A DNA stretch of 64,000 nucleotides from Mobula hypostoma. Taxonomy: Eukaryota. This document shows, one piece after another, positions 233-64,000 of this stretch. Made by a program: the position numbers and the translations under genes. Location: assembly GCF_963921235.1 (NCBI RefSeq), contig NC_086108.1:42842001-42906000 (forward strand). Direction: 5' to 3'. The number at the start of each line of letters is the position of its first letter. Position 1 is the stretch's first letter. Under the pieces are notes generated by a model. The model worked only from the letters and a program-made list of their open reading frames with translations, did not search any database and had not been told where the DNA came from.

Positions 233-493
233 TCCCTTGTGAGCCACAGAATGTCACAGTACAACTGGATTGTAACCTCAATACAGCTCTGGTTCTGTGG
301 GACGACAGTAAAGGAGCGCTGTGGTACACTGCTGTTGCGGAAGGAGCTGATGGGAACATCGTGTCGTGCAGAACGTCAGAAGCATCATGTAGAACACCCC
401 TGTTACTGTGCGGCCAGATATATTCTGTGTATGTTGTAGCATCTGACAACAATTGTAACCATTCTCTGAGCTCAGTGGTTGAAATTCAAGCAG
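233..493 (+). CDS. Exon A1 (FN3 domain, 261 nt)
   Basis: ttttcAG|TCCCTTGTGAG...GCAG|GTaact; VPCEPQNVTVQLDCNLNTALVLWDDSKG... Confidence 0.92.
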
Positions 494-3400
494 GTAACTA
501 ATTAATGATATGGGATGTACCAGTATGAAACAAGCTTACAGCATGTTTGGTTAGCTTGTCATGCATTTCTGTGCAATCATTTATACTCTTTCATTCAATT
601 TGTAATCTCAATCCCATGCTAGGCATTTTTAATGCTTTATAAGAATTTTTAGAATTTATTGTGGGAGTTTTTTCAATATTATTTTATATTTACCCATTTC
701 TGGAATTTATACAAATTGACTGCCCTTTACTTATTTATTTCTTTGATTCCCCCAGCTCCCTGTAGTCCCCAGAATGTAAGTGCTCACTTGGACTGTACAA
801 CGCACGGAGCGTCAGTTTGGTGGGAGGAGAGCGAGGGGGCAGTGTACTATGCTGCCATGGCAGAAGGAACGGAAGGAGACAAGTACTCGTGCAATACAAC
901 AGAAGCAAACTGTGAGATCGCAGGCCTCCCATGTGGCCAGACGTACAATATATCTGTGTTAGCGATGGACGAGAATTGCACCAGTTTACCAAGTCCAGCT
1001 TTTAATATTGAGACAGGTAAACTTATAATTACCTTTTTATTTAACATAACAAAAGCTACCTTATTTCACTCGTTAAGAAAATGCAGGAATAAATTGAAAT
1101 GTCATCATTAGGGCTCTACATCAAATATATTCACAATAACTATAGTTAGTTATTATTGTAAGCTTCATCATCAATTGTATCAGTTGCTGATCCTTGCTCT
1201 GAAAAACTGATTACGCAGTTATTTTCCTTTCATTCCCAACAATCAATTTGAGAACCTTTTAATGTAAAGATAAAGTGCAATTTCATAATTCTGTTTGTTT
1301 GTAAGATATGGACATATTTATGCAGGAATACATTGACAGTACTTTATTAATTTGATTATAAAACTATGATTATTTTTTCTGCAGTACCATGTATCCCACA
1401 GAATGTGGTAGCTCACATCAACTGCGAGAATAACACTGTCTCAGTGTTTTGGGATCCCAGCAATGGCTCAGAGTCATACCATGTAACAGCACAAGGGACC
1501 AATGGCCACTGGGCCTCCTGCAATACAACAGGCACTGAATGTGAGGTCTCTGATGTGTACTGTGGACTGTATTACTACATAACTGTACAGGCAGTCCGTA
1601 TGCAGTGTAACAGCTCACACAGCTCTGCTGTGGCAGTTAAAACAGGTAATTCTAGTCAAAACTGTATATTAAAATTCTGCAGATATTCTCTTTTGCATCT
1701 AACTGTTATGTGGCTGAATACTTGTGCAACAGTTTCAGGTTAAGTTCTTCTTCTTGCAGTACCGTGTGTCCCCCAGAACGTCAATGCTTACATGGACTGT
1801 GATGCTGGATTTCTGTCAGTCTCCTGGGAGTTCAGTGAAGGTGCATCATCATACATTGCCACTGCAGAAGGAGGTGACGTGCAGCGATGCAGCGCCAACG
1901 ATACGCTGTGTGACATCACTGACCTGTCCTGTGGAGAGACCTATACTGTCACAGTCCTTGCGCACGATGACACCTGTGACTCTGCTGAAAGTCCTTCCAT
2001 CACAATGAGAACAGGTAACTGCTGGGTCGTCCAATTTCTGAATCGCTGATTTCTCCATCAGTCACACTAACTGATTTCTGATCTGGCAAAAACTCTATTT
2101 TCCTGAAAAAGCTCTCCTGTATCTTTTCAAGCAATTACAAAAACCAGTCCCTCAAGTCAGCTGCTGCTGTACATCCGCCACTCATTTGATCTCCTTGTTC
2201 TCTTCTAGTTTGCTGCATCCCACAGAACCTCGATGTCCATGTAGACTGTGACACAAACGATGCTTCAGTACTGTGGAGCCACACTAAAGGTGCAGTCTCT
2301 TACTCGGCAACAGCAGAAGGAAGTGATGGGCACCCAGTTTCCTGTGAGACGGCCAGTACCGAATGTCAGATAACCAACCTATACTGTGGACAGGTGTATA
2401 ATTTAACTGTGACAGCACTGGACGGTGTGTGTGACACCTCACAAAGCTATCATTTTGAATTTAGCACTGGTATGTCTTTCTACTTCTATATTCCTCATAA
2501 TTCTAAACTGTGCAGCCTGTTTGCCACAACAAATTAATTCACTGTGCACCGTACATTCCACAATGTAAAAATATTCCAATGCACTTAATTGGGACTTTAT
2601 TAGCAAATCTATGATTTGTTGTGTCAAATTATTCTAAGTGACACTTAGATACCTAACTTTAAGTTAGATGACATTAACAATCTAACATTTCTGCTATGTC
2701 CTGATAAATCTTTCTTTTCATTGAAAACATAGAAATATTGACAGGTTTTGTGCAGGAAAAGGCCCTTCAGCTAGGAGGTCTATTCCAACCACCATGCCAC
2801 ATTAAATTAACCTTAGCTGTCTGCACATGGGTCATCCGTCTTAACCAATTTCCCCCTGGGATCAATAAAGTATGACTATGACTATGACTATGTTCCCTGC
2901 CTGTGAACATGCTGTTTAAATGTGTCAAAAGACTTAAGTCCAAAAATATTGTATCGATTTTTCTCTTACTTTTGCTTTTCTATATTAATGGTGTTTAAAA
3001 GGGCATGTTTTTCTTTTTGTAAATATATGGTGACTGTTATTTGAGGACTCTGTATTCAAAATTGTTTGTCAAGATTGGCAATATAACCTGGACCACCTCC
3101 AGAAAAAAAGCAGTTGCAGTATCTTACCCAGTCACAATGTGTTTCTGTAATTTGCAGCCCCTTGTACACCCGAACACACTTCCACCAGTCTGGACTGTGA
3201 CACCAGGAGTACGTCAGTGACCTGGGCGAAGGCTGAGGGTGCCATGTGGTACATTACAACAGCAGAAGGACAAGATGGACACGTTTCACTGTGTAACACA
3301 ACAGAGACGAGCTGTGACTTTGTGGACCTGCACTGCAGTCAGACATATTCAATAACTATAACGGCAGTGGACAGTGACTGTCAGAGTGTAAATACCTCTA

Positions 3401-6400
3401 TTTTTGAAACTGAAACAGGTAAAAATCTGAAGGAGTTTATGAGGCATGAGAAATGTTAATCCAGTGCAAGATAGTTCATTTTCTGAGGATTGTGATCCAG
3501 GAGAGCCACATTGGTAATTTTGGTGTTTATGTTATGTTTGCTTTTAGTTCTAATTTAAAAAAAATAAAGTGGATGCACTATTCTCTAGGTTTCCATGCAA
3601 CTTTTAACACCTTATAAAGGTAGTTATAAATTTCTATTTGTAGAGTGAAGATTTTTCCCTCTTGCTGTGGGACTATTTCCCTTGGGTTTTAAAAATAAAA
3701 TTGTAAATTGTAGTCTGAAGATACTGTGTCTTTGAACAGGAAGTTGGTTACTGCATGACTTCCCAGGATATTTTCTACATTTCGCTTTTTTCCTCTGACT
3801 TTGATATTGAAAGAAACATTCAAAGTGCACTTCTATCATTTATTAGTGACCCATTTGTTTTGTTTTCTCCTCCTGTCCTGAAGCCCCTTGTCCCCCTCAG
3901 AACGTACACGCTGATGGTGTTGGTGTCACCGCCTTTGTATCATGGGAGCCGAGTAACCTCACAGTGTGGTATACCGCTACGGCACAGGGGAGCGATGGAC
4001 ACACAGCCACCTGTACCACATCCAAAACAAACTGTCTCATCCCAGATCTTCACTGCAGCCAAACATACAACATCTCTGTCCTCGCATTTGGTGAAACCTG
4101 TAGCAGCTTCCGGAGCTCCCACTACGAAATTCATACAGGTAAATTAGAAAAAAGCCAGTCAGTGATGTAGTGGCATCAGCATCGAACTTGGAGGCCAATG
4201 GTAGCGGTTCGAATCTAGCCAGCCCCTTACACGCTTTCCATCTGTGCTGGGATGAGTGTTGAGGCAGCAACATGACCCCGTAAAAAACAGACAAATGCTA
4301 AGGAAATGGCAAAAAAAATGCCTCCCAATGCGCCACAACAGCCGAAGAAGAACAGCAAGAACAAATTAGAAAAAGAGGATCTGTTTCTATTACATCTTTC
4401 ATCTAAGCGCATTTCATAATTGTATGTCTATTATTTATTAAAAAATTCACTGGCAAGACCAACATTTATCAGTTCCTCCCAGTTTCATTTGGGTAGGTGC
4501 TCTTGAATTCCCTTTTTAAACCATTTTCTTTTCTCTGCTGAAAGCACTCCCACAGTAATATTCAGCAGGGCTTCCAAGATATTAACTCGGCAACGGAAAA
4601 AAAATGTATTTTCATGGTCAGGATGTTGTGCGAATTGAAGAGGAACCGGGAGTTGTTGATACACATTGCAGCCTCAGAGTGAACTTGTGATAGACAAAGT
4701 GAATGTTTATGATGAAGGATGGGATGCCATTCCAATAGATTGCATTGTACGAGATGGCATCAGCCTTGTGAGCTGTTGTTGTTGCCAGGCAGTACAGAGA
4801 GAGCCTTCAGTTCACCACTCATTGTAGATGGTGGTTGCTAGATGTAAAGTGAAAGTGATGTTTGCTATAGTCGGTGAGTCTAGGGCATGATCTCAGAATA
4901 GAAGGATGTCCATTTAGAACAGAGATAGGGAGGAATTTCTTTTGCCAGAGGGTAGGGAACCTGTGGAATTCATTGCCATAAATGGCTTGGTCATTGAGCA
5001 TAATTAAAGCAGAGGTTGATAGGTTGCTGATTAGTCAGGGCATCAAAGGTTACAGGGAGAAGGCAGGAGAATGACATTGAAAGGGATAATAAATCAGCAA
5101 TGTTGGAATGGCAAAGCAAATCATGGGCCAAATGCTGCAATTCTGCTCCTATATCTTATGGTCTATGTGAAGTTTCCAGCTTCCAACTTACTCTTATCGC
5201 CACAACATTCATATGGCTGGTCCTGTTGAGTTTCTGGCCAGTGGTGACTACAGCATTTTGGTGGTTTTCCTTCAGTGAGGGTAATGCCATTGATCATCAA
5301 GGAGAGATGATTAGATTACATCTTTTTAGAGAATATCTCAGCATTACACTTGCGTTTTGCAAATGCTGCTTTCTGTTTATCAGCCTATGACTAGAAATTA
5401 TCCAGGCTTACTGCATGCAGTTGTACACGATTCACTTTTCTGAGAGGTAGAGATGGGATTGAACATGGTGCATTTCCTAGCAAGTATCCCCATTTCTAAC
5501 CCTATGATGGAAGGATGGTCATTGGTGAGGCATCTGAAGATAGTTAAACCTAGAACATTGTCCTGAGGGCCTGAAAAAGGTGTAATGACTTCCAGCAGCC
5601 ACAAACTCCCTTTTCTCAAATATAACTCCGGTCATGAGAGAGCTTCACCTTGATTCCAATTGAATTTAGTTTTAACGGGAATGTTTAAGACCACTTTCAG
5701 AAGCATTTTGCATCATTAAAAAGGCTGGTTTTGAAGTGTAGTAACTGTAGGTAATAAGCCAATGAGTTGCTCACATCAGAGTCCCAAACAACAACACAAT
5801 TTGTGCAACACTTTTAGCATTTACAATTACTGGCTGAGGAGACAGTAATTATTTGCAGTGGACTGGTCCTGCTTTTGTGCACCTGCAAATCAAAGGAATT
5901 TTATGCTTGGATGCAAGAATTTCATTGTTGTCTCTCTCCTAGGCCATATTGGCTATTCGTGCGCTAAGTTCTGAAGCATGTTTTCCACCCTAGAGCTGTG
6001 ATGTTGTCATCCCTTTCCCAGTGCTCGCGGCCTTTATGCAGTGGGAATTCAATTTTGCTGAAGAAGGAAGCTGAGATGGATGGCATCTCTTTTTAATAAT
6101 GGCTGGAAGTTGCTAAACTTTATCTTTCCAGATATACTAGGCTTTGTCAATATGGAGAAAAAGAGGCTCTGTCAATATGGAGAAAAAGAATATTCTTGGT
6201 TTCGGCTCCTCTCCATTTTTTAAAATTGTCCACTACCATTCAGGACTGGATGTGATTGTTCCACAGCTTTGAGCAGGTCATTTGATTGTAAGATCACTTC
6301 AGTCTGCTGCACCATTTATCAGAGACACATGGCTCCAAGTCCACCTTAACTCCTTTCTGATGATTGGCACAACCTACCTGTAATCTTGCACTACTCCGCA

Positions 6401-9400
6401 GTCCACCAGTCATCTTTTTCACCACTGCCCTCTCCTCCTCTTTATACTGGCCATGTCACCTCTCCACTCTCAGTTCTGATGCATCAACAATTCCCTTCTT
6501 CTGGCAGATGCTGCTCACCCCACTGAGTTCCCCAGCAGATTCTCCAGAATCCAGCATCTGTAGACTCTTGTGTCTTCGTGGTCCTGTGTGGTGCTTTCAC
6601 CAGGAAGATAGATTAACATAGGTGCCCCTTGTGGTTTTCATGGCATGTTCTATTCATTGAACCAGGGTTCGTCCTCAGGGAAGTCTATGAGATTACAGAT
6701 CTGGGTTGATACCCATTTCTTAGCTCCTAGAACTGATGTGAATCATTCCTATTTAATACTGTTAAAGAAACGCGGAATATGACAGAGAGCATTATCAATT
6801 GGATATTGGACATTGTCTCCACAAGGACATTGCAGACAAATTTCAGACAGATACAACTGCAAAAGAGAGATTGAGTATGAGATTAACTAGTTTATCACTT
6901 CATGTTAATTGCCTTGACACCTGCCGCAGCCCCATTTGGTTTTGAGTCAGGGCTGTTGTAGATGACTATGTTATGGGCCCTCCCACCCTAAGTGCTTCTT
7001 CCAAACTTCTCAACATAAAAGAGTATGCTGATCCATGAACTAGGAGAGGAAAGTGAGTGGTAATTAGCAAGACACAACCCAACATCATGAGACCTCATGG
7101 ACATTGTGTACCTACTTTGATGGATACACCAGAGTTCTGCTGTATCCAATACATCCAACTGTAGAGTCGGATGTATCCATTAATAGTAAAGGAGAGCTCT
7201 GAAGCAAAGTGCATAAAGTAAAATTTTACTTCACTTAAAACCCAAGATGTTTGTGAGGAGAACTTTCCAGGGTGCTTTGAGCTGGATATACCTTTGTCAT
7301 ATTCAAACCCGGTGCTTCAGTTTATCCAATATTATTCATATGATGTTTTAGCATACCAACTTGACCTAAGAAAATTGCTTGCTGCATGTTTGAAGCCATA
7401 TATAGACCAGACTGCACAAAGACAACTGATTTTCCTACTGGAGAGAGTTAGTGAACCAGACAGATTGTTATCGTATTCTAGATGTTTCATATGACTATTC
7501 TTAATGATAGTTTTTTTTAAATTAATTCCAGATATTTTAATTGATTACTTTTAGTTGCTGAATGCCACAGTAAGACTCAAATTCATGTCTCTTATCATTA
7601 GTATGGAACTTCAGACCTCTCATCTTGTAACAGAACCATGTGTTATATTCACTGTTCATATAGAAAGCACTGAGAGATTAAATATCTGTGGATATGGACC
7701 ATAACCTATCAATGACTCGAGCTAGAACTTGTTCAAATGATTACACAATAACATATGAGTTGGCAACATGTGGAATATAAAGGGGACAGATTCACCAGGA
7801 CTATTTAAGTTCATATAAAACATTAGGAAGGGCTACTTCTTAAGATTTTTCTCACATGAATTTTTTAATTGCAGTATTTCTGTTTCTATAGCACCTTGTG
7901 CTCCAGATGAAATCGTCGCCAATGTGGACTGTAACTCCAACAGAGTGGTAGTTTCATGGGGCCGGACTAATGGAGCAAAAGAGTTCGATGTGACCGCCGA
8001 GGGAAGTGATGGTCATACACACTCACACAACACAACAGAGACACGCCACGAAATGCTGGATTTACACTGTGGACAGTCCTATAACATAACCGTAACAACA
8101 CTGAGTTACAGCCGGCATGGCATTTCGAGTACTTCCATCCAAATACAAACTGGTAAATACAGCTAATCTTTAAATAGCATATAGCAAGGAAATAATTTTA
8201 TATTATTGTGCATATTTTGGGCCAGTAGGAAAAATTATATTCCAAGTAACACTGTTCATTGCTGAGAATCTAACAACTGAGTTAGGTTCTGATTCAAATG
8301 CAGTATCCTCCTGGTCACATGACTGCCAGAGCAATGCTATACACTATGATTTTTCCAGGCATTTAAAGAGTCATGGCTTTAATACAAGTGATACAAGGGC
8401 TCAAATCTAAACCTGCATATACAGTCTCTGTTGTAACAAAAGGTAATATCTTCAGGAGATTCCAGAGTGCATGTATATACAGACATCACTCACTTCTGTA
8501 AAGATGTTTAGAACAGACTGACAGATGAAGTCTTGTATTTCACAATGAGAGGTTAAATGTTTAAGTGTGAACAGCAAACATTTTATGTTATTATTTTATT
8601 ATGCCCATGTTGAAGGTGTCTTTGAAAGTTAATTTGTTGAACTCATAGTTGTGATTCCACAGATGTAATTCCTCTCTATTTTTTCCTGCCTTTGTCCTAA
8701 TGTGTGAACTGTAGGAAAGCATTTTCAAACCCCCTTCATTTAAAATATTCCCGCTGGTACAGACAATGCAGTGTTCTGTGTTGCAAAATAATAACATTTT
8801 CAAAAAGTTGCTTGGTTATCAATTAAACACCCTATTCCCAAAGTTTTGAGGATACCTTTATGGATTCGTGAGAAAAAAGGAAGACCGTTTTAATGAAAAT
8901 GCATTTTAAAAAGCTGTCCCATCCAATGTACTAATGCTTGTATAGGTTGTTTAATTGCTTAAAGTCGGCATGACTCTATGGTTGTATAAAAACAGAAGCA
9001 TAAGAGGTGTGCGAGATGCTGGATGATGGAGTCACCTTGACAGAAAACAGCCTGCATCATTTTATACTTGCCCTGTTGTACCTGTTGAATCTGTAATCGT
9101 TTCGCTCTGCTTTTGTGTTATCTGGCATGAGGAAGCCAGCTCCATTGGGAATTTGTTCATCAATCCCTTTTGACCAGAGACATAAATATTGATTTCAACA
9201 TAATGTCTGCGATGATGAGTTTGAGAAATAAGGAATGAGAATAATTAAAATTATTCAGTCATTGCTAAAATAAGTAAGTAAATATCTATTCACATATTTA
9301 GTGAAGCATCTAATGAATGATGCATTAGAGCCCATAGATCTTAAAGTAAATATTTGGTAAATTCACAACGATAGTTGATCCTTTTGTCTTACATTCTTTT

Positions 9401-12400
9401 TGATTTCCAATCTTATCTTCAGTCCCTTGTGAGCCACAGAATGTCACAGTACAACTGGATTGTAACCTCAATACAGCTCTGGTTCTGTGGGACGACAGTA
9501 AAGGAGCACTGTGGTACACTGCCATTGCAGAAGGAGCTGATGGGAGCATTGTGTCATGTGGATCGTCAGAAGCATCATGTGGAATACCCGTGTTACTCTG
9601 TGGCCAGTTATATTCTGTGTATGTTGTGGCATCCGACAAGACTTGCAACCATTCTCTGAGCTCAGTGGTTGAAATTCAAACAGGTAGTTTATTAACTGAT
9701 GCTTCATTGTCACAGCAAGGTACGCCAACCAGTGTAGATTTTAATGTGTTGACAAAAGACGCTGGAATTATAATGAACTTTGTTAATAGTGTATTTACAA
9801 TTATTATTTTTCCTAGAAATTTAATATCTCATACCTATTTGTGATAAATTACCTTTGGCACTAATCTGCACATCCCCTTGATATCCATGTCTTCTGTCAA
9901 TCCATGTCAGACAACTTCTCTCTTTTCTGCTTTCAGCATATTTTCTAACCACAGAATATCTCTCTACACAGGCAGCAACAGTTAGTCACGTCGTCTCTTC
10001 TCAGTTGCAACAAAGTTTTCATTATTTTGTTGATTAAATCCTCTCAACCACCAATCTACCCATCTTGCTACATTTTCTTTTCAAAATTCACTTAATTTTC
10101 TCCAGCATTCTTTTCTGGGACACCATAATATATCCCTTCGGAAAAGCCACGTGCATTTCATCAAGAAAGTAAGAATTTACATACAGTATATGCAAAATCC
10201 AAGAAAAGACTTACTACTCATCAAGCCTACCTCACAAGCACAAAGGCCAGCACAATTTAGAAGTAACTATGAAGCGCAATAGACTTGACTGTTGTTCGTA
10301 CAACAACAATCTAAACTGGACTTTGTTGAAAGCGATGATTGTTCACAATAATAACCATACGAGATTTGTTAATGTTGCACGTCACATAATTCATTCACCA
10401 AAACCCTCTCACTGGTGAACAGAAGAAAGGCTTACAAACTGAATGCTGTTTTGGATGCATGTACTTCAGCTGAACTGAAGGTCGGACATAGCCTTTATCT
10501 ATCCTGTTTCTCTCATTCCTTCAGCTCCTTGCAGACCTCAAAATGTAAGCACCTATTTGAACTGTGCAACGCACACGGCATCAGTTTGGTGGGAGGAGAG
10601 TGAGGGGGCAGTGTACTATGCTGCCATGGCAGAAGGAATGGAAGGAGACAGATACTTATGCAATACAACGGAAGCAAACTGTGAGATCGCAGGCCTCCCA
10701 TGTGGCCAGACGTATAACGTAACTGTGTTAGCGATGGACGAGAAGTGCACTAGTTTACCAAGTCAACCATCTGAAATTCAAACAGGTAAAATTTTGATTA
10801 TTCTTTTTTTTTTGAAAACCAACAGAACAGGATCACTAACAAATAGGAATAACATGAATTAGCATAGGTTTATATAATGGATAGGTGTTACGCTAGATAT
10901 TTGGTACAAAATTATTTATGAACCTTTTAAACCAGCCAGATGTTAATCCATACTCTGCTTCCTCTTTCTATAGCACCTTGTATCCCACAGAGTGTGGTAG
11001 GTCACATCAACTGCGAGAATAACACTGTCTCAGTGTTTTGGGATCCCAGCAATGGCTCAGAGTCATACCACGTAACAGCACAAGGGACCAATGGCCACTG
11101 GGCCTCCTGCAATACAACAGGCACTGAATGTGAGGTCTCTGATGTGTACTGTGGACTGTATTACTACATAACTGTACAGGCAGTCCGCATGAAGTGTAAC
11201 AGCTCACACAGCTCTGCTCTGGCAGTTAAAACAGGTAATTCTAGTCAAAACTGTATATTAAAATTCTGCAGATATTCTCTTTTGCATCTAACTGTTATGT
11301 GGCTGAATATTTGTGCAACAGTTTCAGGTTAAGTTCTTTCTTCTTGCAGTACCGTGTGTCCCCCAGAACGTCAATGCTTACATGGACTGTGATTCTGGAT
11401 TTCTGTCAGTCTCCTGGGAGTTCAGTGAAGGTGCATCATCATACATTGCCACTGCAGAAGGAGGTGACGTGCAGCGATGCAGCGCCAACGATACGCTGTG
11501 TGACATCACTGACCTGTCCTGTGGAGAGACCTACACTGTCACAGTCCTTGCGCACGATGACACCTGTGACTCTGCTGAAAGTCCTTCCATCACAGTGAGA
11601 ACAGGTAACTGCTGGGTCGTCCAATTTCTGAACACGAACTCTCTATCAATCATATGAACAATGATTTCCGATGTGGCTAAAATATTGTTCTAAAAATACA
11701 CTTGATTGAAGATTTCAGTTGAATAAACAACTTCATCTTCTTTGTAACTCCATGTGTTTGCCAGATCTATACTGCTCTTCACCTGGTCTTCTTGCTTTTT
11801 TTGTAGTTTCCTGCATCCCACAGAACCTCGATGTCCATGTAGACTGTGACACAAACGATGCTTCAGTACTGTGGAGCCACACTAAAGGTGCAGTCTCTTA
11901 CTCGGCAACAGCAGAAGGAAGTGATGGGCACCCAGTTTCTTGCGAGACAGCCAATGAAGAATGTCAGATAACCAACCTACACTGTGGACAGGTGTATAAT
12001 TTAACTGTGACAGCGCTGGATGGTGTGTGTGACACCTCACAAAGCTCTCTGTTTGCATTCAGCACTGGTAGGTGTCTTGAATTAGATATTATCAATATAC
12101 CATGTTTCCAGTGGTAATATTAGCTACTTATTTTCTGTTGTAAAATATCTGAGACCTCTTATTGGGACAAGGAGCATGGATATTTAAAAGTAACTGGGAA
12201 AAGTCACAACTGATAGCCAGGTATAAAATGTAGAATTTCTGAAAAGTAGCAAGGTATGAGGTGTGTAGATAGGATAAATACAAGCAGGCTTTTTCCACTG
12301 AGGTTGAGTGGGACTACAACCAGAGGTCATGGGTTAAGAGTGAAAGGTGAGAAGTCTAAGGGGAACATGAGGGAGAACTTTTTCACTCAGAGGGTCGTGA

Positions 12401-39400: not shown

Positions 39401-42400
39401 TCCCCATCATGCTGTTAACTATATACTATGTTTAGAATCTTTGGCAGACTTGTCTAAGATGTTAATATATAAAATTAATTAATTATTGAATGAAGTCCTA
39501 ACTCTATAGGAGTACGACTACATACTTCTCTACAGTATGATAACCAACAATTTACCACCACCTCTGATTACTATCTGTTAATCATTTGATAACCATGCTG
39601 CCCCTGCCCTTCAGTTCATGGATTCCACTTCTGCTAACAATTGTATCATCTACAATGAATTCAAACATCATGTTCACAAATTTAGAGAGTGAATTTCATC
39701 AACACTGATACTTTAAATTGCGAACCATTTCCATGATTTAGAATAATAAACTCCAATAAAGTTATTACTAACTTAGTAAGTTTGTCAATCAGCTTATTTG
39801 AATCCACAATGCTTGATCCATTGCCTGACATCCATTTTAACTTTCAACCTTATTTTCAGTCCCTTGTGACCCACAGAATGTCAAAGTACAACTGGATTGT
39901 AACCTCAATACAGCTCTTGTATTGTGGGATGATAGTGAAGGAGCACTGTGGTACACTGCCATTGCAGAAGGAGCTGACGGGGGCAACATTTCATGCAGCA
40001 CATCAGAAACATCATGTAGAACACCCATGCTGCTCTGTGGCCAGTTATATTCTGTGTATGTTGTAGCATCTGACAGGACCTGCAACCACTCTCTGAGTTC
40101 AGCAGTTGAAATACAGACAGGTAATCCATTGATTATTGACTATGACATATAATCGAAAAATGCAATTCCATTATTTTAATTCAGTAGTATACTAGAGCAG
40201 TATATTGACATAATATTAAATAAAAATTATCAGTTGTACCAAAGTCTTGTTAGTCAGCCACACAAGATCAAATTGCTGTTTAGATTTTGCATGTTATGTT
40301 ACCATAACCGCTCCAACACCATTTCGTCTAACTTCCAGGTTATACGTGGTGACTTGTTTATAGTCTGATAATAAATTTTACTTTGAACATTTCAACTTTT
40401 TTCTGTAAATGCCTAATTAAACAACCTGAAACAATATCTGTGCTCTAATCCTCCACCTAATGATGTGAATACTATCAAGCATGCCTTAAAATTAATAAAT
40501 CCATGCAGGATTCAATGACTTAATCCCCAAAAATGGTAAATTATCAATTATTTTAGATTCCGATATCTGATATTGATTGAATTCCTCCAGTACTGATCAA
40601 GTTAGCCTCTGGCCGGCTGGTGGCGCAGTGGCATCAGCGCCGGACTCCGGAGTGAAGGCTCCCGAGTTCGAATCCAAGTGGTGCCACCCCCCGAACACGC
40701 TTTCCATCCGTGCCGGGTTGAGCATTGAGTTAGCCACTCGGCCTCGTAAAAAACGAGGGTCAAGTCAGGAACATTCATATCCTGACCCAGTTAATCCGAA
40801 AGGAGACTAATCCTGACACCACGCACCAGACAAGAATGGCTGACTGTCTGGTGTGACAGGTATTATATAGTAGTGAAACCCAGGGAGTTCATCAAGGCAA
40901 CTTCTAGATATGTGACTATCACACAGTAGCCAGATTGAATCATTTAGTTGTTGATGTTTCTACTGTCCCATACAAAGCTTTCCCATGTTCACAGAAAGAA
41001 TTATTAATGTTCTTATTTAGAAGTTTCCATTTTTTAATTTATTGATGTATACATGTTAATTTAAGTAAATGTATGGCTATTCCTTTTTCCATTCTGTTAT
41101 GTTTTAATATTTCTTAAGCTCCCTGTAGTCCCCAGAATGTAAGTGCTCACTTGGACTGTGGAAAATGCACAACATCAGTTTGGTGGGAGGAGAGCGAGGG
41201 TGCAGTGTACTACACTGCTATGGCAGAAGGAGTGGAAGGAGAGGACTACTCCTGCAATACAACGGGAGCAAACTGTGAGATTGTAGGCCTCCCATGTGGC
41301 CAGATGTTTAATATAACTGTGTTAGCGATGGACGAGAATTGCACCAGCTTACCAAGTCCAGCTTTTGAAATTCAAACAGGTAACGATTCTTTCCTTTTCA
41401 ATAAAAATCAACAGAATGAGCATCAGAAACGAATTTCAAAAATTGCATAACATGATAAAACAGGAGATCAATATCCAACACCAAACAGTTAGTAAAATAA
41501 TAATTAACATAGGTAATCATTGCAAAAAACTCAATTGGGTAGCAGATAATCCCGGCAGATAGAGGAGGCCTCTTGCTTGTGCTTTAACTGTGCATTGGGA
41601 ATGCTGTCTTATCTGGTGATCATGTAACATTAATAAGGGTTCAACACTCTCACTTTATAGACCTTGCTTTCTGAATCGTTTCAGAGCTTGCTGAGATTAT
41701 GAAAATATTTAGCATGGCAAGGAGACAAAGATATCTCTTTCATATACAATCCACCTTGGTTAGGTGAAATATAGTGTAGGGAAGTGAATGGGCATGCACT
41801 TAGATAGAAGGAATAAAGGCGTAAACTATTTTCAAAATGGGGAGAAAATTCAGAAATCAGAGGCGCAAAGGGACTTGGGAGTCTTCGTGCAGGATGGCCT
41901 AAAGATTAATTTGCAAGTTGAGCAGGGGTAAAGAAGACAAATGCAATGTTAGTATTCATTTTGAGAAGACTAGAATATAAAAGCAAGGATGCAATACTAA
42001 GGTTTCAAAAGGCATTAGTTAGAACATACTTTGCACAACTTTAGGCCCCTTAGCTATGAATTGACACTGGAGATGGTCCAGAGGAGGTTCACAAGAATGA
42101 TTCTGGGAATGAAAGGGTATGAGGAGTGTTAAATGGCTCTGGACCTGTACTTGCTGGAGTTTAGAAGATAGAGGGGTGGTCTCATTGAAACCTATCGAAT
42201 ATTGAAAGACCTGGATAGAGTGAACATGGGAGGATGTTTCCTATAGTGGGGAAGTCTAAGGCCAGAGGGCAGAGCCTCAGAATAGAAGGATAACTCATTT
42301 GAACTGAGATGGGGGTGGTGAGTCTGTGGAATTCATTGCCACAGATGGCTAGGGAGGACAAACCATTGGGTATATTTGAAGTGGAGGTTGCTATGTTCTG

Positions 42401-45400
42401 TGGTCAGGGCATCAAAGGTTACAGGGAGAAGGCAGGATAATGGGGTTAAGAAAATAATGAATCAGCCATGCTTGAATAGCAGAGTATATTTGATGGGCTG
42501 AGTGGCCTAATTCTGCTCCTATGACTTATGATCATATGGTCCTATGGTAATAGACAGAAACAGATAATATTCAGGCCATGTTAAGTGTGTAGCATTTCCA
42601 TTATCATATAGGAAACACTCTAATATATACTCTCTGTTAAGATTCAGTCTTAAATAATGTTACAAAAAAGATTGTTTGCAGTTTTGCTCATTGTTGTAGT
42701 AATATGATTTGCACAAATTAGCTATGATTTCTATACAAAAATTGTAAGATTTGATATTGTGTAACTTGTAATCATGTTATATTGTTTACAATAGTTTCCT
42801 GTGCATCTTTCTACAGCACCTTGTATCCCACAGAATGTGGTAGCTCACATCAGCTGCGAGAATAACACTGTCTCAGTGTCTTGGGATCCCAGCAATGGCT
42901 CAGAGTCATACCACGTAACAGCACAAGGGACCAATGGCCACTGGGCCTCCTGCAATACAACAGGCACTGAATGTGAGGTCTCTGATGTGTACTGTGGACT
43001 GTATTACTACATAACTGTACAGGCAGTCCGCATGGGGTGTAACAGCTCACACAGCTCTGCTGTGGCAGTTAAAGCAGGTAACATGTGAAGTATTGAAAAT
43101 CATTTCTAAAATTTACATACATTGTTTGCAGTGTTGCCTTTTATGTACCCTTCAGCCTCTATTGATAAATTTTCTTCTTGCAGTACCGTGTGTCCCCCAG
43201 AACGTCAATGCTTACATGGACTGTGATTCTGGACATATGTCAGTCTCCTGGGAATTTTGTGAAGGTGCATCATCATACATTGCCACTGCAGAAGGAGGTG
43301 ACGTGCAGCGATGCAGCGCCAACGATACGCTGTGTGACATCACTGACCTGTCCTGTGGAGAGACCTACACTGTCACAGTCCTTGCGCACGATGACACCTG
43401 TGACTCTGCTGAAAGTCCTTCGGTCACAATGAGAACAGGTAACTGCAGCGAAGAGCAATTTCCTGCATTACTAATTCCTCTCTCCTTCACATTAACTTTG
43501 GTGCCTTCTCTATTAGAACATCCTTCTCTAGAATACATTTATTCTGGAGGACAGTGGTTAGCGCGAAGCTATTATAGCCCCAGGGGTTGAAGTTCTGAGT
43601 TCAATTCCGGTGTCCTCTGTAACTAAGTTTGTACATACTTCCCATGAGTATGTGGGTTTCCTCTGGGAGCGCTGGTTTCCTCCCACAGTCCAACAACATG
43701 CTAGTTAGGTTAACTGGTCATTGTCATTTGTCCTGTTATTAGACTAGGATTAAATATGTGGGTGGCTGGGTGACATGGCTTGTTGGCCCAGAAGGGTTTG
43801 TTCCATGCTCTATCTCTAAATAAACAAACATTTGCCTTAATATTTTGGTTTTAAAAACAATTCCAGAAAATTTAGCAGTTACCATGTAAGTGACACTTTA
43901 TCTGTTGCTTTTGCCATTTCTAGTTTCGTGCATCCCACAGAACCTCGATGTCCATGTAGACTGTGACACAAACGATGCTTCAGTATTGTGGAGCCACACT
44001 AAAGGTGCAGTCTCTTACTTGGCAACTGCAGAAGGAAGTGATGGGCACCCAGTTTCCTGCGAAACGGCCAGTACCGAATGTCAGATAACCAACCTACACT
44101 GTGGACAGGTGTATAATTTAACTGTGACAGCCCTGGATGGTGTGTGTGACACCTCACAAAGCTCTCTGTTTGCATTCAGCACTGGTAGGTGTTTTGATGT
44201 GATTTAGTAAGTTTGATAATTAACTGTACAATTTTTCCTGAAAATTTCACTTACAGTGCACCTTCCATGTATCCAAATATCACACCACATTGAAGTAGAA
44301 AACTGTTAGGTATGCCTACAAAAGAATTATGCTAAATATTAAACGTTTTGATAAGCTGTCAACATCAGGCATGGAATGAACATTAATTGAGAAAACTTGC
44401 CACGGGGAATATAAGGTCCTTTCTATCAGTGGCTTTCAATAATCCATACAGTACAGATGCAGAGAAAAGCTGTAAATGCAACTGTTAGAAGTGTGGTAGC
44501 TGAATGACATATTAAAATGCAAATAGAAGAAAGCTTCAATTATCTAATATTTGACTATTCTGAAATCCAGATGGTTCGGATCTGACACACCAGCTGATAC
44601 TTGACCTACAGCTTACCAGGGCTAACTTTCCATGCTTCCCCTCTGCTGAACCAAGTTTCCGCGCCCCCTTCCAACTCAGCTGGCCCTGGCTGGTTCCTGA
44701 GCTTCCGTTAAACCCACAGGGCCACGACTGCATTTCATCCTTCAAGCTCAGTTCAAGTAGAGACCAGTTTCTATACTTTCTATAAACTGACCAAGGCCCT
44801 GTTTTCTGCATACCCTTTATTACGTTCACTGGAAAAATTATCATGTCACTGTATAATATCCTCCCAAAAATTGAAATGTGTCAGTGTATTAACAGGAATA
44901 TAATCCAATAGTCCAGAAAATCTGCTGGTCTGGTACCACCAAAGTCCTGAGAGTGACACTTTTAATGTAATCAGTACTGAAAGTCCTCCAAAACTTATAA
45001 CATTAGATTGTTTCTAGATATTTTAGTGTTATTTTCAATAAAACCAATGTCCTCCTTGAGTGAAGCTAAGCTCGAAAGTGAATTTTGTGTTCTGAATTTT
45101 CTGTTTCCCCAGTAATTATTGCTTCCATTAGTTAAGTATTATAGGGGGCTCTTTGTTGATAACAAGTACAAAAATAAATCCACTATTCTCGCAAGCTCAA
45201 AAACAATTTTACTGACTACTTATATTGACAGAAGTGGATTTTAGCCATTCCCACCACGTCACAGTTACTTTGTGTTTCTGTAATATGCAGCCCCTTGTGC
45301 ACCCGAACACACTTCCACCAGTCTGGACTGTGACACCAGGAGTACGTCAGTGACCTGGGCGAAGGCTGAGGGTGCCATGTGGTACATTACAACAGCAGAA

Positions 45401-48400
45401 GGACAAGATGGACACGTTTCACTGTGTAACACAACAGAGACGAGCTGTGACTTTGTGGACCTGCACTGCAGTCAGACATATTCAATAACTATAACGGCAG
45501 TGGACAGTGACTGTCAGAGTGTAAATACATCCATTTTTGAAACTGAAACAGGTAAAAATTCCTAGAGGCTTAAGATGTTTGAAAATCATTTCATTGTCAC
45601 AGCAAAAAGGTTGTTCTCCAGACTGCAGTCCAGTCAGGTCACACTGTTAGTTTAAGAATTTGTAAAGACTCTTGTTTTCCTCTGAGTGGTGATAGAATTC
45701 AGCATTGTCAGTAGGTTTCTGCATGTCTTCTAGCATTAACCCTTTACATTAGAAGGTTTAATTTCTTCCATTTTCAGATAAGTGAGCCAAAGCCTTGTGA
45801 CAAAATAACTTGTTAGAAAATTAAGACCCTGATGCACTGTATGTATTTGAATGAGAATATACTGTAATTACGTCATCACTGTGCATCTGTACAGTAAAAG
45901 TTTATTTTCTGTTGTGTATATTAATGGAAACAATTGAAACTCTGTACTACTATAATTAAATATTGATTCTTTTCTCTCTCCTCCTGTCCTGAAGCCCCTT
46001 GTCCCCCTCAGAACATACAAGCTGATTGTGCTGGTGTCACTGCCTTTGTATCATGGGAGCCGAGTAACCTCACATTGTGGTACACCGCTACGGCAGAGGG
46101 GAGTGATGGACACACAGCCACCTGTACCACATCCAAAACAAACTGTCTCATCCCAGATCTTCACTGCAGCCAAATATATAACGTCTCTGTACTCGCATTT
46201 GGTGAAACCTGCAGCAGCCTGCAAAGCTCCCACCATGAAATTCAGACAGGTAATATAGAAAGAGAGAACCTCTCTTCAACACATGAGGCCTTTTCATCTC
46301 CTCAAGACTGTTCACACTCAACAAAGTGGGTCCAGTCATCTTCAGACTAGCCTCCGATTATATATTTAATTGTTAATACAGGTCCACAATCCCTTATACG
46401 AAATTCTTGGGGCCAGTTGCATTTCGGAATTCAGAATTTTTCGGATTTCAGACCCCCCCCCCACCGATACCAACAAACACGTATTTAACCTGTCTCAGCG
46501 CGGAGGACTGTAAGACNNNNNNNNNNNNNNNNNNNNNNNNNNNNNNNNNNNNNNNNNNNNNNNNNNNNNNNNNNNNNNNNNNNNNNNNNNNNNNNNNNNN
46601 NNNNNNNNNNNNNNNNNNNNNNNNNNNNNNNNNNNNNNNNNNNNNNNNNNNNNNNNCCAACAAAAACATTCAATAAAACATAAAAATATACAGCTTCAAA
46701 CGAACCGAATCAAACAAATGGTAAATGACTTATTGGAATAAATGTAGAACATCACTGTCAGTGTCGCTATAAAACTTCAGTAACTTGTCTTTCTGTTTAT
46801 TTAAATCATGTGCAGTGGTAATTCCGACACTATTTTCTTCAGTAAGACGCCGCACAGACACACCACGATCAAGCTTCGGCAATAACTCCACTTTCTGTGT
46901 TATTGATAGAGAAGATTCCTTCTATTTTTCTCATTGTTACCCATAGGAGTATCTGCAGCTCTTTTTGACATTTTCACAGTGAAATTAAACGCAAAGTCAA
47001 CAGTGAACACAAAACGTCAGCAAACAGCAAATGTACGTGTAACCAGTATGAGCGCTGAGCCACAACTGATGCCTGGCGGCCTCTGCTAGTGCTGCCACAT
47101 CACACCTGAGTGACGTCAGCTGTTGGCGAAAAAAACTTCGGTTTTCAGAGCTTTTTGGATTTCAGAATTTCGAATAAAGGAATGTGCACCTGTAACCTAA
47201 TTGCTTTTACTATCTCTGATTGAAATTCAAATTATAGGCTGTCATAAGGTTACCTGGGGTAAGAGTCTGTTTGCAGTGCACAACCTGCTCATCCTCATGG
47301 ATTGCCTCTCAGTATAGAGAACCAGCTTGGCCTTCAGATCAAATTAGTGTCGGTAAACAACAGGTCATTGGGACAGTGGTTCTCTTAATTTCTCTCAGGA
47401 TACCAGATCAGGTTTTATAACTGAAATGATTGATAATACTTGTTAATGACCGCAAAATCCATCTATCGATATTCAGTGAAAGCAGACAGGTCTGTTGGTC
47501 AGGCTTGCTCTTGACTTGTTTAACCAATGCGTAAATTGAGATTTCAATCTATAGAATATAAAGGTGACTTTGTCAGAGCAACCTAAGTTCTGTAAAATGT
47601 TGGCAACAACCATCTCTCCATCCTCTGGCACGAGCCTGATGAATTTTAATGTTTACATATTATTTTCTATAGCACCTTGTGCTCCAGATGAAATTGTCGC
47701 CAATGTGGACTGTAACTTCAACAGAGTGGTAGTTTCATGGGGCCGGACTAATGGAGCAAAAGAGTTCGATGTGACCGCTGAGGGAAGTGATGGTCATATA
47801 CGCTCACACAACACAACAGAGACACGCCAGGAAATGCTGGATTTACACTGTGGACAGTCCTATAACATAACCGTAACGACACTGAGTTACAGCCGGCATG
47901 GCATTTCGAGTACTTCCATCCAAATACAAACTGGTAATACTATCCACTTAGTAGTATGCACAACGGAAATGGTCAGATTTATTAATTATGATACAGTCCA
48001 GGCCAGAAGAATTGATACAATTTTTTTTTATTTTTGAATAGCACCTTGCATTCCAGAGAACCTAGCAGCTGAGCTAACCTGCAGTTCAAATACAGTGTCC
48101 ATCACGTGGAATGACACTGAAGGAGCCAAGTTATATACTGTCGCCGCTCGAGACAGACAAAAAGTAATCGCCTTATTCAACACAAGTAGTACAAGGGCTC
48201 AGCTCCCACATTTGCAGTGTGGTGAATATTTCACGATCTCTGTTCTAGCAACAGATGACATCTGCAGCAGTCCTCAGAGTGCAGTGGTGAATGTACTTAC
48301 AGGTATCGCTCAATTCCATTTGTCGTTTGTTTGGTCCTTCTGTTTGACTACAGTTCGTAGTGCAGATTAGATTAAAGATCACGGCTATACTTCCTTTAAT

Positions 48401-63562: not shown

Positions 63563-64000
63563 TACGAGCCTGACTGAATTTTTTGAGGATGTGACTAAAC
63601 ACATTGATGAAGGTAGAGCAGTAGATGTAGTGTATATCGATTTCATCAAGGCATTTGACAAGGTACTCCATGCAAGGTTCATTGAGAAAGTAAGGAGGCA
63701 TGGGATCCAGGGGAACATTGCTTTGTGGATCCAGAACTGGCTTGCCCACAAAAGGCAAAGAGTAGTTATAGATGGGTCATATTCTGCATGGAGGTCAGTC
63801 ACCCGTGGTGTGCCTCAGGGATCTGTTCTGGGACCTCTACTCTTCGTGATTTTTATAAATGACCTGGAGGAAGAAGTGGAGGAATGGAAATTAAATTTGC
63901 TGACGACACAAAGGTTGGAGGTGTTGTGGATAGTGTGGAGGGCTGTCAGAAGTTACAATGGGACATTGATAGGATGCAAACCTGGGCTGAGAAGTGGCAG
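63563..64000 (+). mobile_element. CR1 RT fragment (runs off the window end)
   Basis: Highly similar to 55250-55680 ([24 protein letters not shown]). Confidence 0.88.

What the first reader, a model, noticed from the sequence alone, without database searches (positions are those of the whole stretch)
233..48302. Exon-restricted homogenisation in an old tandem array: near-identical exons inside strongly diverged introns
Seen: paralogous exons are almost identical, including silent sites. By my count D1 and D2 differ at 3/255 nt and C1 and C3 at 9/261 nt. All four C copies share an identical central run of more than 100 nt, and differences cluster near exon edges. Long introns show only faint homology (e.g. 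TGTGATCCAG...CAC after F1 and F2) and carry different transposons. Shared sequence typically extends only about 10-30 nt past the splice sites, or across the short C-D and H-I introns. Inference: the duplication is old and exons are continually re-homogenised by DNA-level gene conversion seeded in the conserved coding blocks. Purifying selection alone would not preserve synonymous sites. Tracts running into introns argue against purely cDNA-mediated conversion.
Basis: partly seen in the sequence, partly recalled or inferred. Interest (0 to 1): 0.9.

Follow-up and report, generated by a model that had tools for sequence, protein, structure and literature searches.

The report
Exon-only gene conversion in ray gene
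Inside one giant ray gene, a block of nine exons was copied at least four times before two orders of rays split; since then some exons have kept overwriting each other while the introns between them drifted apart, a clear natural example of DNA copying confined to exons.

Summary

**Structure.** The + strand carries at least 4 tandem units of 9 exons (A–I). Each exon is 255 or 261 nt, phase 1-1, and encodes one Cys-rich FN3 domain. The gene is a giant elasmobranch gene annotated "FNDC7-like".

All hold: D1–D2 3/255, C1–C3 9/261, and a 116-nt four-way identical run in C.

**Heterogeneity.** Homogeneity varies by exon. dS is 0–0.09 for C and D but 0.4–0.7 for A, for I4, and for H between its two groups. 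Introns are essentially unalignable between units.

**Cross-species tests.**
- In *Narcine*, introns match this ray's introns by unit position only. The duplication therefore predates the split of these rays.
- Exons B–H cluster by species. AU tests reject positional orthology at p = 1e-3 to 1e-89.
- Between-species dS at C and D is 0.3–0.5, so synonymous constraint is excluded.
- I4 still pairs with its *Narcine* orthologue, and dead exon I1 has not been homogenised. Both act as internal controls.

**Tracts.** They are 261–283 nt for one exon, or about 650 nt for two exons plus a short intron, which shows a DNA template. Converted exons are GC3-enriched.

**Assembly gap.** It lies in intron G4–H4 and touches no exon.

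**Verdict.** This is a known mechanism (concerted evolution by gene conversion) in an unusually fine-grained, long-lived, exon-bounded form.

The parts
233..8152 (+). Unit 1: exons A1-H1 (I1 is dead, listed separately)
   Evidence: A1 233-493, B1 756-1016, C1 1385-1645, D1 1760-2014, E1 2209-2469, F1 3158-3418, G1 3884-4138, H1 7892-8152. All AG/GT, phase 1-1, open.
8250..8520 (+). Dead exon I1 (pseudo-exon)
   Evidence: Deletions of 2, 4, 1 and 13 nt; acceptor AG lost. 74% identical both to this ray's I2/I3 and to Narcine I1/I2, so not homogenised since it died.
9423..19300 (+). Unit 2: exons A2-I2
   Evidence: A2 9423-9683, B2 10525-10785, C2 10974-11234, D2 11350-11604, E2 11807-12067, F2 13939-14199, G2 17105-17359, H2 18682-18942, I2 19040-19300.
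21413..35370 (+). Unit 3: exons A3-I3
   Evidence: A3 21413-21673, B3 22616-22876, C3 26735-26995, D3 27102-27356, E3 29166-29426, F3 30416-30676, G3 33446-33700, H3 34751-35011, I3 35110-35370. Introns are orthologous to Narcine's penultimate unit.
39860..48302 (+). Unit 4 (last unit): exons A4-I4
   Evidence: A4 39860-40120, B4 41119-41379, C4 42817-43077, D4 43184-43438, E4 43924-44184, F4 45291-45551, G4 45995-46249, H4 47673-47933, I4 48042-48302. Introns are orthologous to Narcine's last unit. I4 forms a clade with Narcine's last-unit I.
1385..2042 (+). Two-exon conversion block C1-intron-D1, matching C2-D2 (10974-11632)
   Evidence: 658 nt at 98.0% including the 114-nt intron. The next 100 columns are at 27% and 62%. 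Introns AB and BC of units 1 and 2 are unalignable.
26733..27385 (+). Two-exon conversion block C3-intron-D3, matching C4-D4
   Evidence: 653 nt at 96.0%. CD3 and CD4 both match Narcine CD2 (75-76%) and not Narcine CD3, so the unit-4 intron was overwritten with the unit-3 type.
18662..19300 (+). Two-exon block H2-intron-I2, matching H3-I3
   Evidence: 639 nt at 96.1%. Exons are 98-99% and the intron 86-89%. The upstream intron is at only 65%.
3144..3426 (+). Single-exon conversion block F1, matching F4
   Evidence: 283 nt at 98.6%, extending 14 nt upstream and 8 nt downstream of the exon. Flanks are at 43% and 59%.
7883..8158 (+). Single-exon conversion block H1, matching H4
   Evidence: 276 nt at 97.1%, extending 9 nt and 6 nt past the exon. 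24 informative sites support 14|23.
11337..11611 (+). Single-exon conversion block D2, matching D3, across two different C-D intron types
   Evidence: 275 nt at 99.3%. The C-D introns of units 2 and 3 align only over their last 13 nt.
46517..46656 (.). Assembly gap inside intron G4-H4
   Evidence: No exon is touched. The flanks align collinearly to one Narcine G-H intron. Not filled.
49646..58934 (+). Four single-copy FN3 exons downstream of the array (X1-X4), used as neutral calibration
   Evidence: 49646-49906, 51586-51846, 52208-52468, 58674-58934. All four are also found after the array in Narcine and Heptranchias; Heterodontus shows two at the threshold used. dS this ray-Narcine 0.44.
24969..26492 (-). 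LINE-type reverse-transcriptase ORF, present only in intron B3-C3
   Evidence: Pfam RVT_1, E=1e-34. An example of a unit-specific transposon insertion.

Best explanation
This is one giant elasmobranch gene (annotated 'FNDC7-like' in relatives) built of FN3-domain exons. A nine-exon block (A-I) was tandemly multiplied before the lineage of this ray split from that of the electric ray Narcine. Since then the introns have evolved independently in each unit, to the point of being unalignable between units. Many exons have been repeatedly overwritten by their paralogues in other units through short-tract, non-reciprocal, DNA-templated recombination (intragenic gene conversion).

Shown: the duplication is old; the exons are homogenised within species; synonymous constraint, recent duplication and assembly error do not explain it; some tracts carry an intron; homogenisation at exon D continued after the split from Hypanus.

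Inferred: tracts stop at exon edges because strand invasion and heteroduplex extension need near-identical sequence of roughly MEPS length (about 200 bp or more). Only exons, kept similar by protein-level selection and by earlier conversions, still offer that. This is a self-reinforcing loop. Exons that drift too far (I4, probably A) or die (I1) drop out of it. Where a short intron (about 100 nt) has itself been homogenised, the homology block becomes about 650 nt.
For: Anatomy: 35 intact exons of 255/261 nt, phase 1-1, FN3. The same A-I units followed by the same downstream exons occur in Narcine, Heterodontus and Heptranchias.

Old duplication: paralogous introns are unalignable, yet this ray's introns align to Narcine introns of the same unit position only. 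Examples: AB3-AB2 891 nt, AB4-AB3 449 nt, IA2-IA1 1067 nt, IA3-IA2 1251 nt, with cross combinations near zero. I4 + Narcine I3 form a clade at 99/97. Hypanus matches A4 at 98% and B4 at 97%, against 74-87% for the other units. Inter-unit dS at unconverted exons is 0.43-0.70, at least as large as the ray-Narcine single-copy dS of 0.44.

Homogenisation: within-species dS is 0.04 at C and 0.05 at D, against 0.32-0.53 between species. The four copies of C and of D are monophyletic at 100/99. AU tests reject positional orthology for B-H at p=1e-3 to 1e-89.

Mosaic: informative sites are A 12|34 17:2:0, H 14|23 24:1:0, and G mostly 13|24. Pattern-by-exon chi-square p=2e-13. Heterogeneity at 4-fold sites p down to 3.5e-8. 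Sawyer-type run test p<=1e-4 for pairs 1-4 and 2-3.

Tract anatomy: 261-283 nt for single exons and 639-658 nt for two exons plus intron.

DNA template: intron CD4 is of the unit-3 type.

Biased gene conversion: Spearman correlation of dS with GC3 is -0.84 (p=0.005) in this ray and -0.71 (p=0.03) in Narcine. Derived bases shared by two or more units are W>S 82: S>W 28, against 56:39 for unit-specific changes (p=0.025).

Ongoing: six Hypanus-only residues occur in both Hypanus D copies. N8, V40 and R42 are derived and present in all four copies of this ray.

MEPS values: PMC3966225 and PMC3924818.
Against: No population or pedigree data were available, so no conversion event is seen directly. 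'Ongoing' rests on protein-level comparison with Hypanus only, because its DNA could not be fetched.

For single-exon tracts the template (DNA or RNA) cannot be told apart, because the few shared flank bases are splice signals.

The W>S excess is only modestly significant and is absent in Narcine.

The homology-threshold explanation for the exon-edge boundaries is inferred, not tested.

In the two sharks the paralogous introns are still 75-95% identical. There, whole-unit processes or a slower clock cannot be separated from exon-limited conversion.

The window starts 232 nt before A1, so the array may be longer. The species label comes from earlier notes and was not verified.
Confidence: 0.88

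Rival explanations
1. RNA- or cDNA-templated repair: single-exon tracts are copied from spliced transcripts of the same gene, which is why they end at splice junctions.
For: Single-exon blocks overshoot the exon by only 0-14 nt, and those bases are splice signals. C1-C3 is exactly 261 nt.
Against: All introns are retained. The C-D blocks in two unit pairs and the H-I block in one carry their intron (639-658 nt). Intron CD4 was overwritten with the unit-3 type. Paralogue differences cluster toward exon edges, as expected if tracts start inside a homology block. Homology-limited DNA conversion explains both tract classes with one mechanism.
Confidence: 0.06
2. No conversion: the units were duplicated independently and recently in each lineage, so exons look species-specific.
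For: Exons cluster by species. Shark units have alignable introns.
Against: In this ray, paralogous introns are unalignable while they align to Narcine introns by unit position. I4 forms a clade with Narcine's last-unit I. Hypanus shows unit-specific orthology at A, B, F and I. Three incompatible topologies occur among exons of the same units.
Confidence: 0.02
3. Selection on synonymous sites (splicing enhancers, RNA structure) keeps C and D identical.
For: Very low dS at C and D; a 116-nt invariant run.
Against: Between-species dS at C and D is 0.29-0.53 between rays and sharks, like other exons and like the single-copy X exons. The most homogeneous exons differ between species: C and D here, B and E in Narcine.
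Confidence: 0.02
4. Assembly or polishing artefact: reads from different units were mixed so that the exons were falsely homogenised.
For: A gap sits inside the array. Repeats are hard to assemble.
Against: Three other independent assemblies show the same within-species exon similarity (Narcine, Heterodontus, Heptranchias), and the Hypanus protein model agrees. Identical exons sit between unique introns that would anchor reads. The patterns are mosaic and phylogenetically structured, and GC3 correlates with homogenisation.
Confidence: 0.02
5. Unequal crossing-over between units, rather than gene conversion, homogenises the array.
For: It is a tandem array. Unit number seems to differ among species, but no locus is complete.
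Against: Crossing-over would homogenise introns along with exons and would erase positional orthology of introns with Narcine. Neither is seen in this ray. Blocks are 260-660 nt, far shorter than a unit.
Confidence: 0.02

Closest known systems
Long-lasting concerted evolution of mammalian gene pairs by gene conversion (BMP8A/B, DDX19A/B, TUBG1/2; PMC2720389)
   Same: Paralogues are more alike within species than orthologues between species, although the duplication predates speciation. The pattern is a mosaic of concerted and divergent exons. Detection is GENECONV-type, and converted regions have raised GC3.
   Different: In those pairs the converted fragments span exons and introns together; the screen required more than 97% identity over exon-intron-exon. 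Here the introns are unalignable and tracts are single exons or two exons with a short intron. There are at least four copies inside one gene rather than two genes. The time span covers the split of two ray orders.
Coding-restricted concerted evolution of duplicated genes (e.g. yeast ribosomal-protein paralogues that differ primarily in their introns, PMC9068511 abstract; Drosophila amylase and primate globin cases, from my own knowledge and not checked here)
   Same: Coding sequence is homogenised while non-coding flanks or introns diverge. Homology-dependent conversion is the usual explanation.
   Different: Those are separate genes with few exons. Here there are 35 equal-sized, phase 1-1 domain exons of one gene, each acting as its own conversion island. 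Positional intron orthologues in another order provide proof of age.
Intragenic repeat homogenisation in large modular genes (spider silk genes, PMC3563967 and PMC9779670; abalone VERL repeats, PMC2704960)
   Same: Repeats inside one gene evolve in concert.
   Different: As I recall those cases, the repeats are mostly contiguous coding sequence within large exons, or whole units are homogenised (not checked in these papers here). Here the repeats are separated by long, unrelated, transposon-bearing introns that are not homogenised.

Membership tests
Concerted evolution by non-allelic (here intragenic) gene conversion | Paralogues within a species are more similar than orthologues between species | tested here: met
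   dS at C is 0.04 within the species against 0.38-0.41 between species; at D, 0.05 against 0.32-0.53. Species clades at 100/99. AU tests for exons B-H.
Concerted evolution by non-allelic (here intragenic) gene conversion | The duplication predates the speciation used for comparison | tested here: met
   Introns match Narcine by unit position only. I4 + Narcine I3 form a clade. Hypanus shows unit-specific matches at A, B, F and I.
Concerted evolution by non-allelic (here intragenic) gene conversion | Mosaic history: significant runs of identity and conflicting topologies along the sequence | tested here: met
   Pattern-by-exon chi-square p=2e-13. Sawyer-type permutation p<=1e-4 for pairs 1-4 and 2-3. 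GENECONV and RDP themselves were not run.
Concerted evolution by non-allelic (here intragenic) gene conversion | GC enrichment of converted regions (biased gene conversion) | tested here: met
   Spearman correlation of dS with GC3 is -0.84 and -0.71. W>S 82: S>W 28 for shared derived bases in this ray (p=0.025 against unit-specific changes), not significant in Narcine.
Concerted evolution by non-allelic (here intragenic) gene conversion | Direct observation of non-reciprocal transfer (segregating tracts, pedigrees) | not testable with these tools
   Only one haplotype per species was available.
Homogenisation by unequal crossing-over | Whole units, introns included, are homogenised together | tested here: not met
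   Paralogous introns are unalignable in this ray. Blocks are 260-660 nt.
cDNA- or RNA-mediated conversion | Tracts never include intron sequence; introns may be lost | tested here: not met
   The C-D and H-I blocks include their introns; CD4 was overwritten. For single-exon tracts the test is inconclusive.
FNDC7-like giant FN3-repeat proteins of fishes | Long series of Cys-containing FN3 domains, one per phase 1-1 exon, with annotated orthologues | tested here: met
   Pfam fn3 matches of 17-30 bits per exon, of which 2 of 5 pass the 25-bit cut-off. Library proteins carry up to 56 such domains. NCBI names for the elasmobranch orthologues are automatic annotations. Function was not tested.

The most novel reading that the evidence does not exclude
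The single-exon tracts are copied from the gene's own spliced RNA (transcript-templated repair), which would explain why they stop at the splice junctions. DNA-templated events would account only for the blocks that carry a short intron. My data do not exclude this for the single-exon class, because the few shared flank bases are splice signals.
Probability: 0.06. Interest if true: 0.85.

Novelty: new member of a known kind. Interest (0 to 1): 0.6.

Why it matters
Gene conversion between paralogues is thought to need a minimum length of near-identical DNA. In vertebrates this is hard to study in nature, because converted exons and introns usually travel together.

In this gene, 35 equal-sized exons (255/261 nt, close to the published minimum of about 200 bp or more) sit in introns that lost all homology long ago. 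Each exon is therefore a separate, replicated test of that threshold.

The system has built-in controls:
- I4, which escaped conversion.
- I1, an exon that died and was not homogenised afterwards.
- Positional intron orthologues in another ray order, which date the duplication.

It also carries a practical warning. Exon or protein trees of such modular genes will wrongly suggest independent, lineage-specific duplications. Gene models in other species cut this one array into several genes.

Tried and rejected
- The first donor-site script took the first in-frame GT and gave wrong exon ends. It was fixed by requiring the conserved G|GTA/G donor site.
- Global intron alignments with lax gap penalties gave inflated identities of 70-88%, even for unrelated sequence. 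Only the z-scores from that run are used.
- *Hypanus sabinus* genomic DNA could not be fetched because the file is too large. The closest relative was therefore compared at protein level only.
- Literature searches for 'restricted to exons' with gene conversion and for FNDC7 found nothing on this phenomenon in this gene family. A search on intragenic repeated domains gave only silk, mucin and VERL-type cases.
- Synonymous constraint, independent recent duplication, assembly artefact and unequal crossing-over were each considered and rejected on the tests listed under rival explanations.
- Flank identity of 10-30 nt past splice sites was considered as proof of DNA-level tracts. I rejected it as non-diagnostic, because unconverted pairs share these splice-signal bases too.
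- Ray-shark intron comparisons are not position-specific, so they cannot show whether the duplication also predates the shark-ray split.

Full report
**What is there**

The window is vertebrate-like DNA (GC 40%, CpG o/e 0.30) with one N run at 46517-46656. On the + strand there are four tandem units of nine conserved blocks. Each block is an exon of 255 or 261 nt with AG and GT sites and phase 1-1, and each encodes one Cys-containing FN3-like domain. The finding's coordinates run exactly from the start of A1 to the end of I4. There are 35 intact exons. The ninth exon of unit 1 (I1, about 8250-8520) is dead: it has deletions of 2, 4, 1 and 13 nt and has lost its acceptor. Four further single-copy FN3 exons follow the array at 49646-58934.

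An exhaustive protein search finds giant proteins with up to 56 such domains in fishes and amphibians. The closest matches are elasmobranch proteins that NCBI names 'fibronectin type III domain-containing protein 7-like', from *Heptranchias*, *Heterodontus*, *Narcine* and *Hypanus*. Earlier notes of this scan call the genome a devil ray or stingray. I did not verify the species. In my scripts it is labelled 'Mob'.

**Check of the observation**

Paralogous introns are almost entirely unalignable even with blastn at word size 7. The exceptions are:
- the short C-D introns (units 1-2 at 98-99%, units 3-4 at 93%, no match between the two types apart from the last 13 nt);
- H-I of units 2-3 (86-89%);
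- scattered patches at 65-78%.

Identity drops from about 0.90 at exon edges to near background within about 30 nt of the splice sites, with unrelated splice-site flanks as control. Unit-specific insertions are real: a LINE reverse transcriptase only in intron B3-C3 and a 57-nt minisatellite only in I3-A4.

| Exon family | dS between units |
|---|---|
| C, D | 0-0.09 |
| E, G | 0.11-0.23 |
| F | 0.04-0.30 |
| A, B | 0.2-0.7 |
| H | 0.05 within (1,4) and within (2,3); 0.43-0.50 between those groups |
| I | 0.035 for I2-I3; 0.6 against I4 |

**The gap**

The gap lies in intron G4-H4, and no exon or reading frame depends on it. The sequence to its left aligns to positions 1-137 of the orthologous *Narcine* G-H intron (weakly, E=0.006). 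The sequence to its right aligns to positions 150-392 (E=1e-22). This is consistent with one continuous intron.

**Mosaic history within the window**

Parsimony-informative sites support three incompatible groupings in different exons:
- A: 12|34 at 17 sites, against 2 and 0 for the alternatives.
- H: 14|23 at 24 sites, against 1 and 0.
- G: 13|24 at 7 sites, mostly in its 3' half.
- F: 14|23 at 5 sites.

Pattern-by-exon heterogeneity gives p=2e-13. Differences at 4-fold sites are heterogeneous among exons for every unit pair (p from 0.03 to 3.5e-8). A Sawyer-type permutation of concordant runs gives p<=1e-4 for pairs 1-4 and 2-3.

**Cross-species tests**

I fetched the orthologous loci of *Narcine bancroftii* (L001 and L003, merged), *Heterodontus francisci* (L002) and *Heptranchias perlo* (L004). 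All have tandem A-I units with identical exon lengths. *Narcine* and *Heptranchias* show the same four downstream exons; *Heterodontus* shows two of them at the threshold used.

*Constraint is excluded.* Between-species dS at C and D (0.29-0.53 between rays and sharks) is like that of the other exons. It is also like the single-copy X exons (this ray-*Narcine* 0.44, ray-sharks 0.54-0.64). Within this ray, dS is 0.04 at C and 0.05 at D.

*The duplication is old.* This ray's introns align to *Narcine* introns only at the equivalent unit position, with cross combinations at or near zero.

| This ray's intron | *Narcine* intron | Aligned |
|---|---|---|
| AB3 | AB2 | 891 nt, 64% |
| AB4 | AB3 | 449 nt, 70% |
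| BC3 | BC2 | matched |
| BC4 | BC3 | matched |
| IA2 | IA1 | 1067 nt |
| IA3 | IA2 | 1251 nt |
| HI4 | HI3 | matched |
| GH4 | GH3 | matched |

Within this ray the same introns do not align to each other.

*Exons behave the opposite way.* The four copies of C and of D form one clade each (100/99). AU tests reject the positional-orthology clades for exons B-H at p=1e-3 to 1e-89.

*One exon kept its orthology.* I4 groups with *Narcine*'s last-unit I (99/97). This shows at exon level that the units are older than the split.

*Protein-level control from* Hypanus. The *Hypanus* protein P0159 maps one-to-one to units 3 and 4 at exons A, B, F and I:
- A: 98% to A4, against 81-87% to the others.
- B: 97% to B4, against 74-81%.
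- F: 90% to F3, against 78-79%.
- I: 99% to I3, against 73% to I4.

It shows no unit specificity at C, D, E or G.

*Homogenisation continued after the* Hypanus *split.* In exon D both *Hypanus* copies share six residues absent from all four copies of this ray. Three of them (D8, M40, Q42) are also present or nearly so in *Narcine*. The derived N8, V40 and R42 therefore spread to all four units in this ray's lineage after the split.

**Tract anatomy and template**

The youngest blocks are single exons of 261-283 nt, overshooting the exon by 0-14 nt: F1/F4, H1/H4, D2/D3, C1/C3, C2/C4 and B1/B3. The others are two exons plus their roughly 100-nt intron, at 639-658 nt: C-D in units 1/2 and in units 3/4, and H-I in units 2/3.

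Introns CD3 and CD4 both match *Narcine* CD2, not *Narcine* CD3. The unit-4 intron was therefore overwritten with the unit-3 type, which requires a DNA template. Paralogue differences cluster in the outer 45 nt of exons (17.6% against 12.9%, p=0.004), and there is no such effect between species. This fits tracts that start inside a homology block and often fail to reach its edge.

GC3 is highest in the most homogenised exons (Spearman -0.84 in this ray, -0.71 in *Narcine*). Derived bases that spread to two or more units are W>S 82: S>W 28, against 56:39 for unit-specific changes (p=0.025; not significant in *Narcine*). This is the expected mark of GC-biased gene conversion, as used in PMC2720389.

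**Mechanism**

Shown:
- an old duplication;
- exon-limited homogenisation;
- a DNA template for at least the intron-carrying blocks;
- continuation after the *Hypanus* split.

Inferred: conversion needs a stretch of near-identical sequence. Published minimal efficient processing segments are about 200 bp in yeast, more than 200 bp in mouse and 337-456 bp in human (PMC3924818, PMC3966225). The exons are 255-261 nt, right at that size, and the introns offer no homology. Each exon is therefore an isolated island in which selection on the protein and earlier conversions keep homology high enough for the next conversion. Exons that diverge too far (I4, largely A) or die (I1) fall out of the loop. 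I1 is 74% identical both to this ray's I2/I3 and to *Narcine*'s I1/I2.

**Comparison with what is known**

Concerted evolution by gene conversion is well known, including cases lasting over 100 million years with mosaic exons and raised GC3 (PMC2720389). In those cases introns are converted together with exons. Coding-restricted homogenisation of separate duplicate genes is also known, for example yeast ribosomal-protein paralogues that differ mainly in introns (PMC9068511 abstract). Other classical cases I know only from memory.

I found no report of this phenomenon for FNDC7-like genes. I also found no report of single-exon conversion islands repeated over dozens of exons of one gene. I therefore file it as a new member of a known kind. 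The mechanism is ordinary. The grain, the replication, the age and the internal controls are unusual.

**Limits**

- There is one haplotype per species and no direct observation of events.
- The template of single-exon tracts is not resolved.
- In the two sharks the paralogous introns are still 75-95% identical, so exon restriction is less clear-cut there.
- Ray-shark intron matches are not position-specific, so it remains open whether the duplication predates the shark-ray split.
- The array may continue upstream of the window.

Noticed in passing
window 8250-8520: Dead exon I1 has frame-breaking deletions (2, 4, 1 and 13 nt) and a lost acceptor AG. It is equally distant (74%) from this ray's I2/I3 and from Narcine's I1/I2, so it has not been homogenised since it died.
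   Followed up: yes
window 37222-37902: A 57-nt minisatellite of about 12 copies (94% matches) is present only in intron I3-A4. The long ORFs on both strands there are repeat artefacts.
   Followed up: partly
window 24969-26492 (-), 55399-56070 (+), 24308-24554 ~ 59473-59719, 55311-55677 ~ 63635-64000: LINE-type reverse-transcriptase ORFs and interspersed repeat copies (88-94% identical) lie in introns. None is shared between equivalent introns of different units.
   Followed up: partly
exons H1-H4 (7892-8152, 18682-18942, 34751-35011, 47673-47933) and their orthologues in L001-L004: Exon H encodes a domain lacking two of the family's conserved cysteines. The window copies have H, R or Q in their place, and the H domain is 88-91% conserved in the other three species, so this looks like an old, conserved loss of one presumed disulfide. 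It is also the exon with the lowest dN.
   Followed up: no
window 3884-4138 (G1), 2209-2469 (E1): G1 alone has lost the second conserved Cys (…HADGVGV… against …QADCAGV…). E1 alone begins with CC instead of SC. These are unit-specific changes that conversion has not erased.
   Followed up: no
L001-L004 (Narcine, Heterodontus, Heptranchias) and the Hypanus gene models: Public annotations cut this one array into several adjacent gene models with different names ('FNDC7-like', 'receptor-type tyrosine-protein phosphatase beta-like'). All exons are phase 1-1, and models run through I-to-A junctions, so it is probably one very large gene.
   Followed up: partly
L002 (Heterodontus), L004 (Heptranchias): In the two sharks the paralogous introns are still 75-95% identical while exon dS is only 0.01-0.13. 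Shark-shark single-copy dS is only 0.23. The clock is slow, and there may be a weaker form of the same exon bias.
   Followed up: partly
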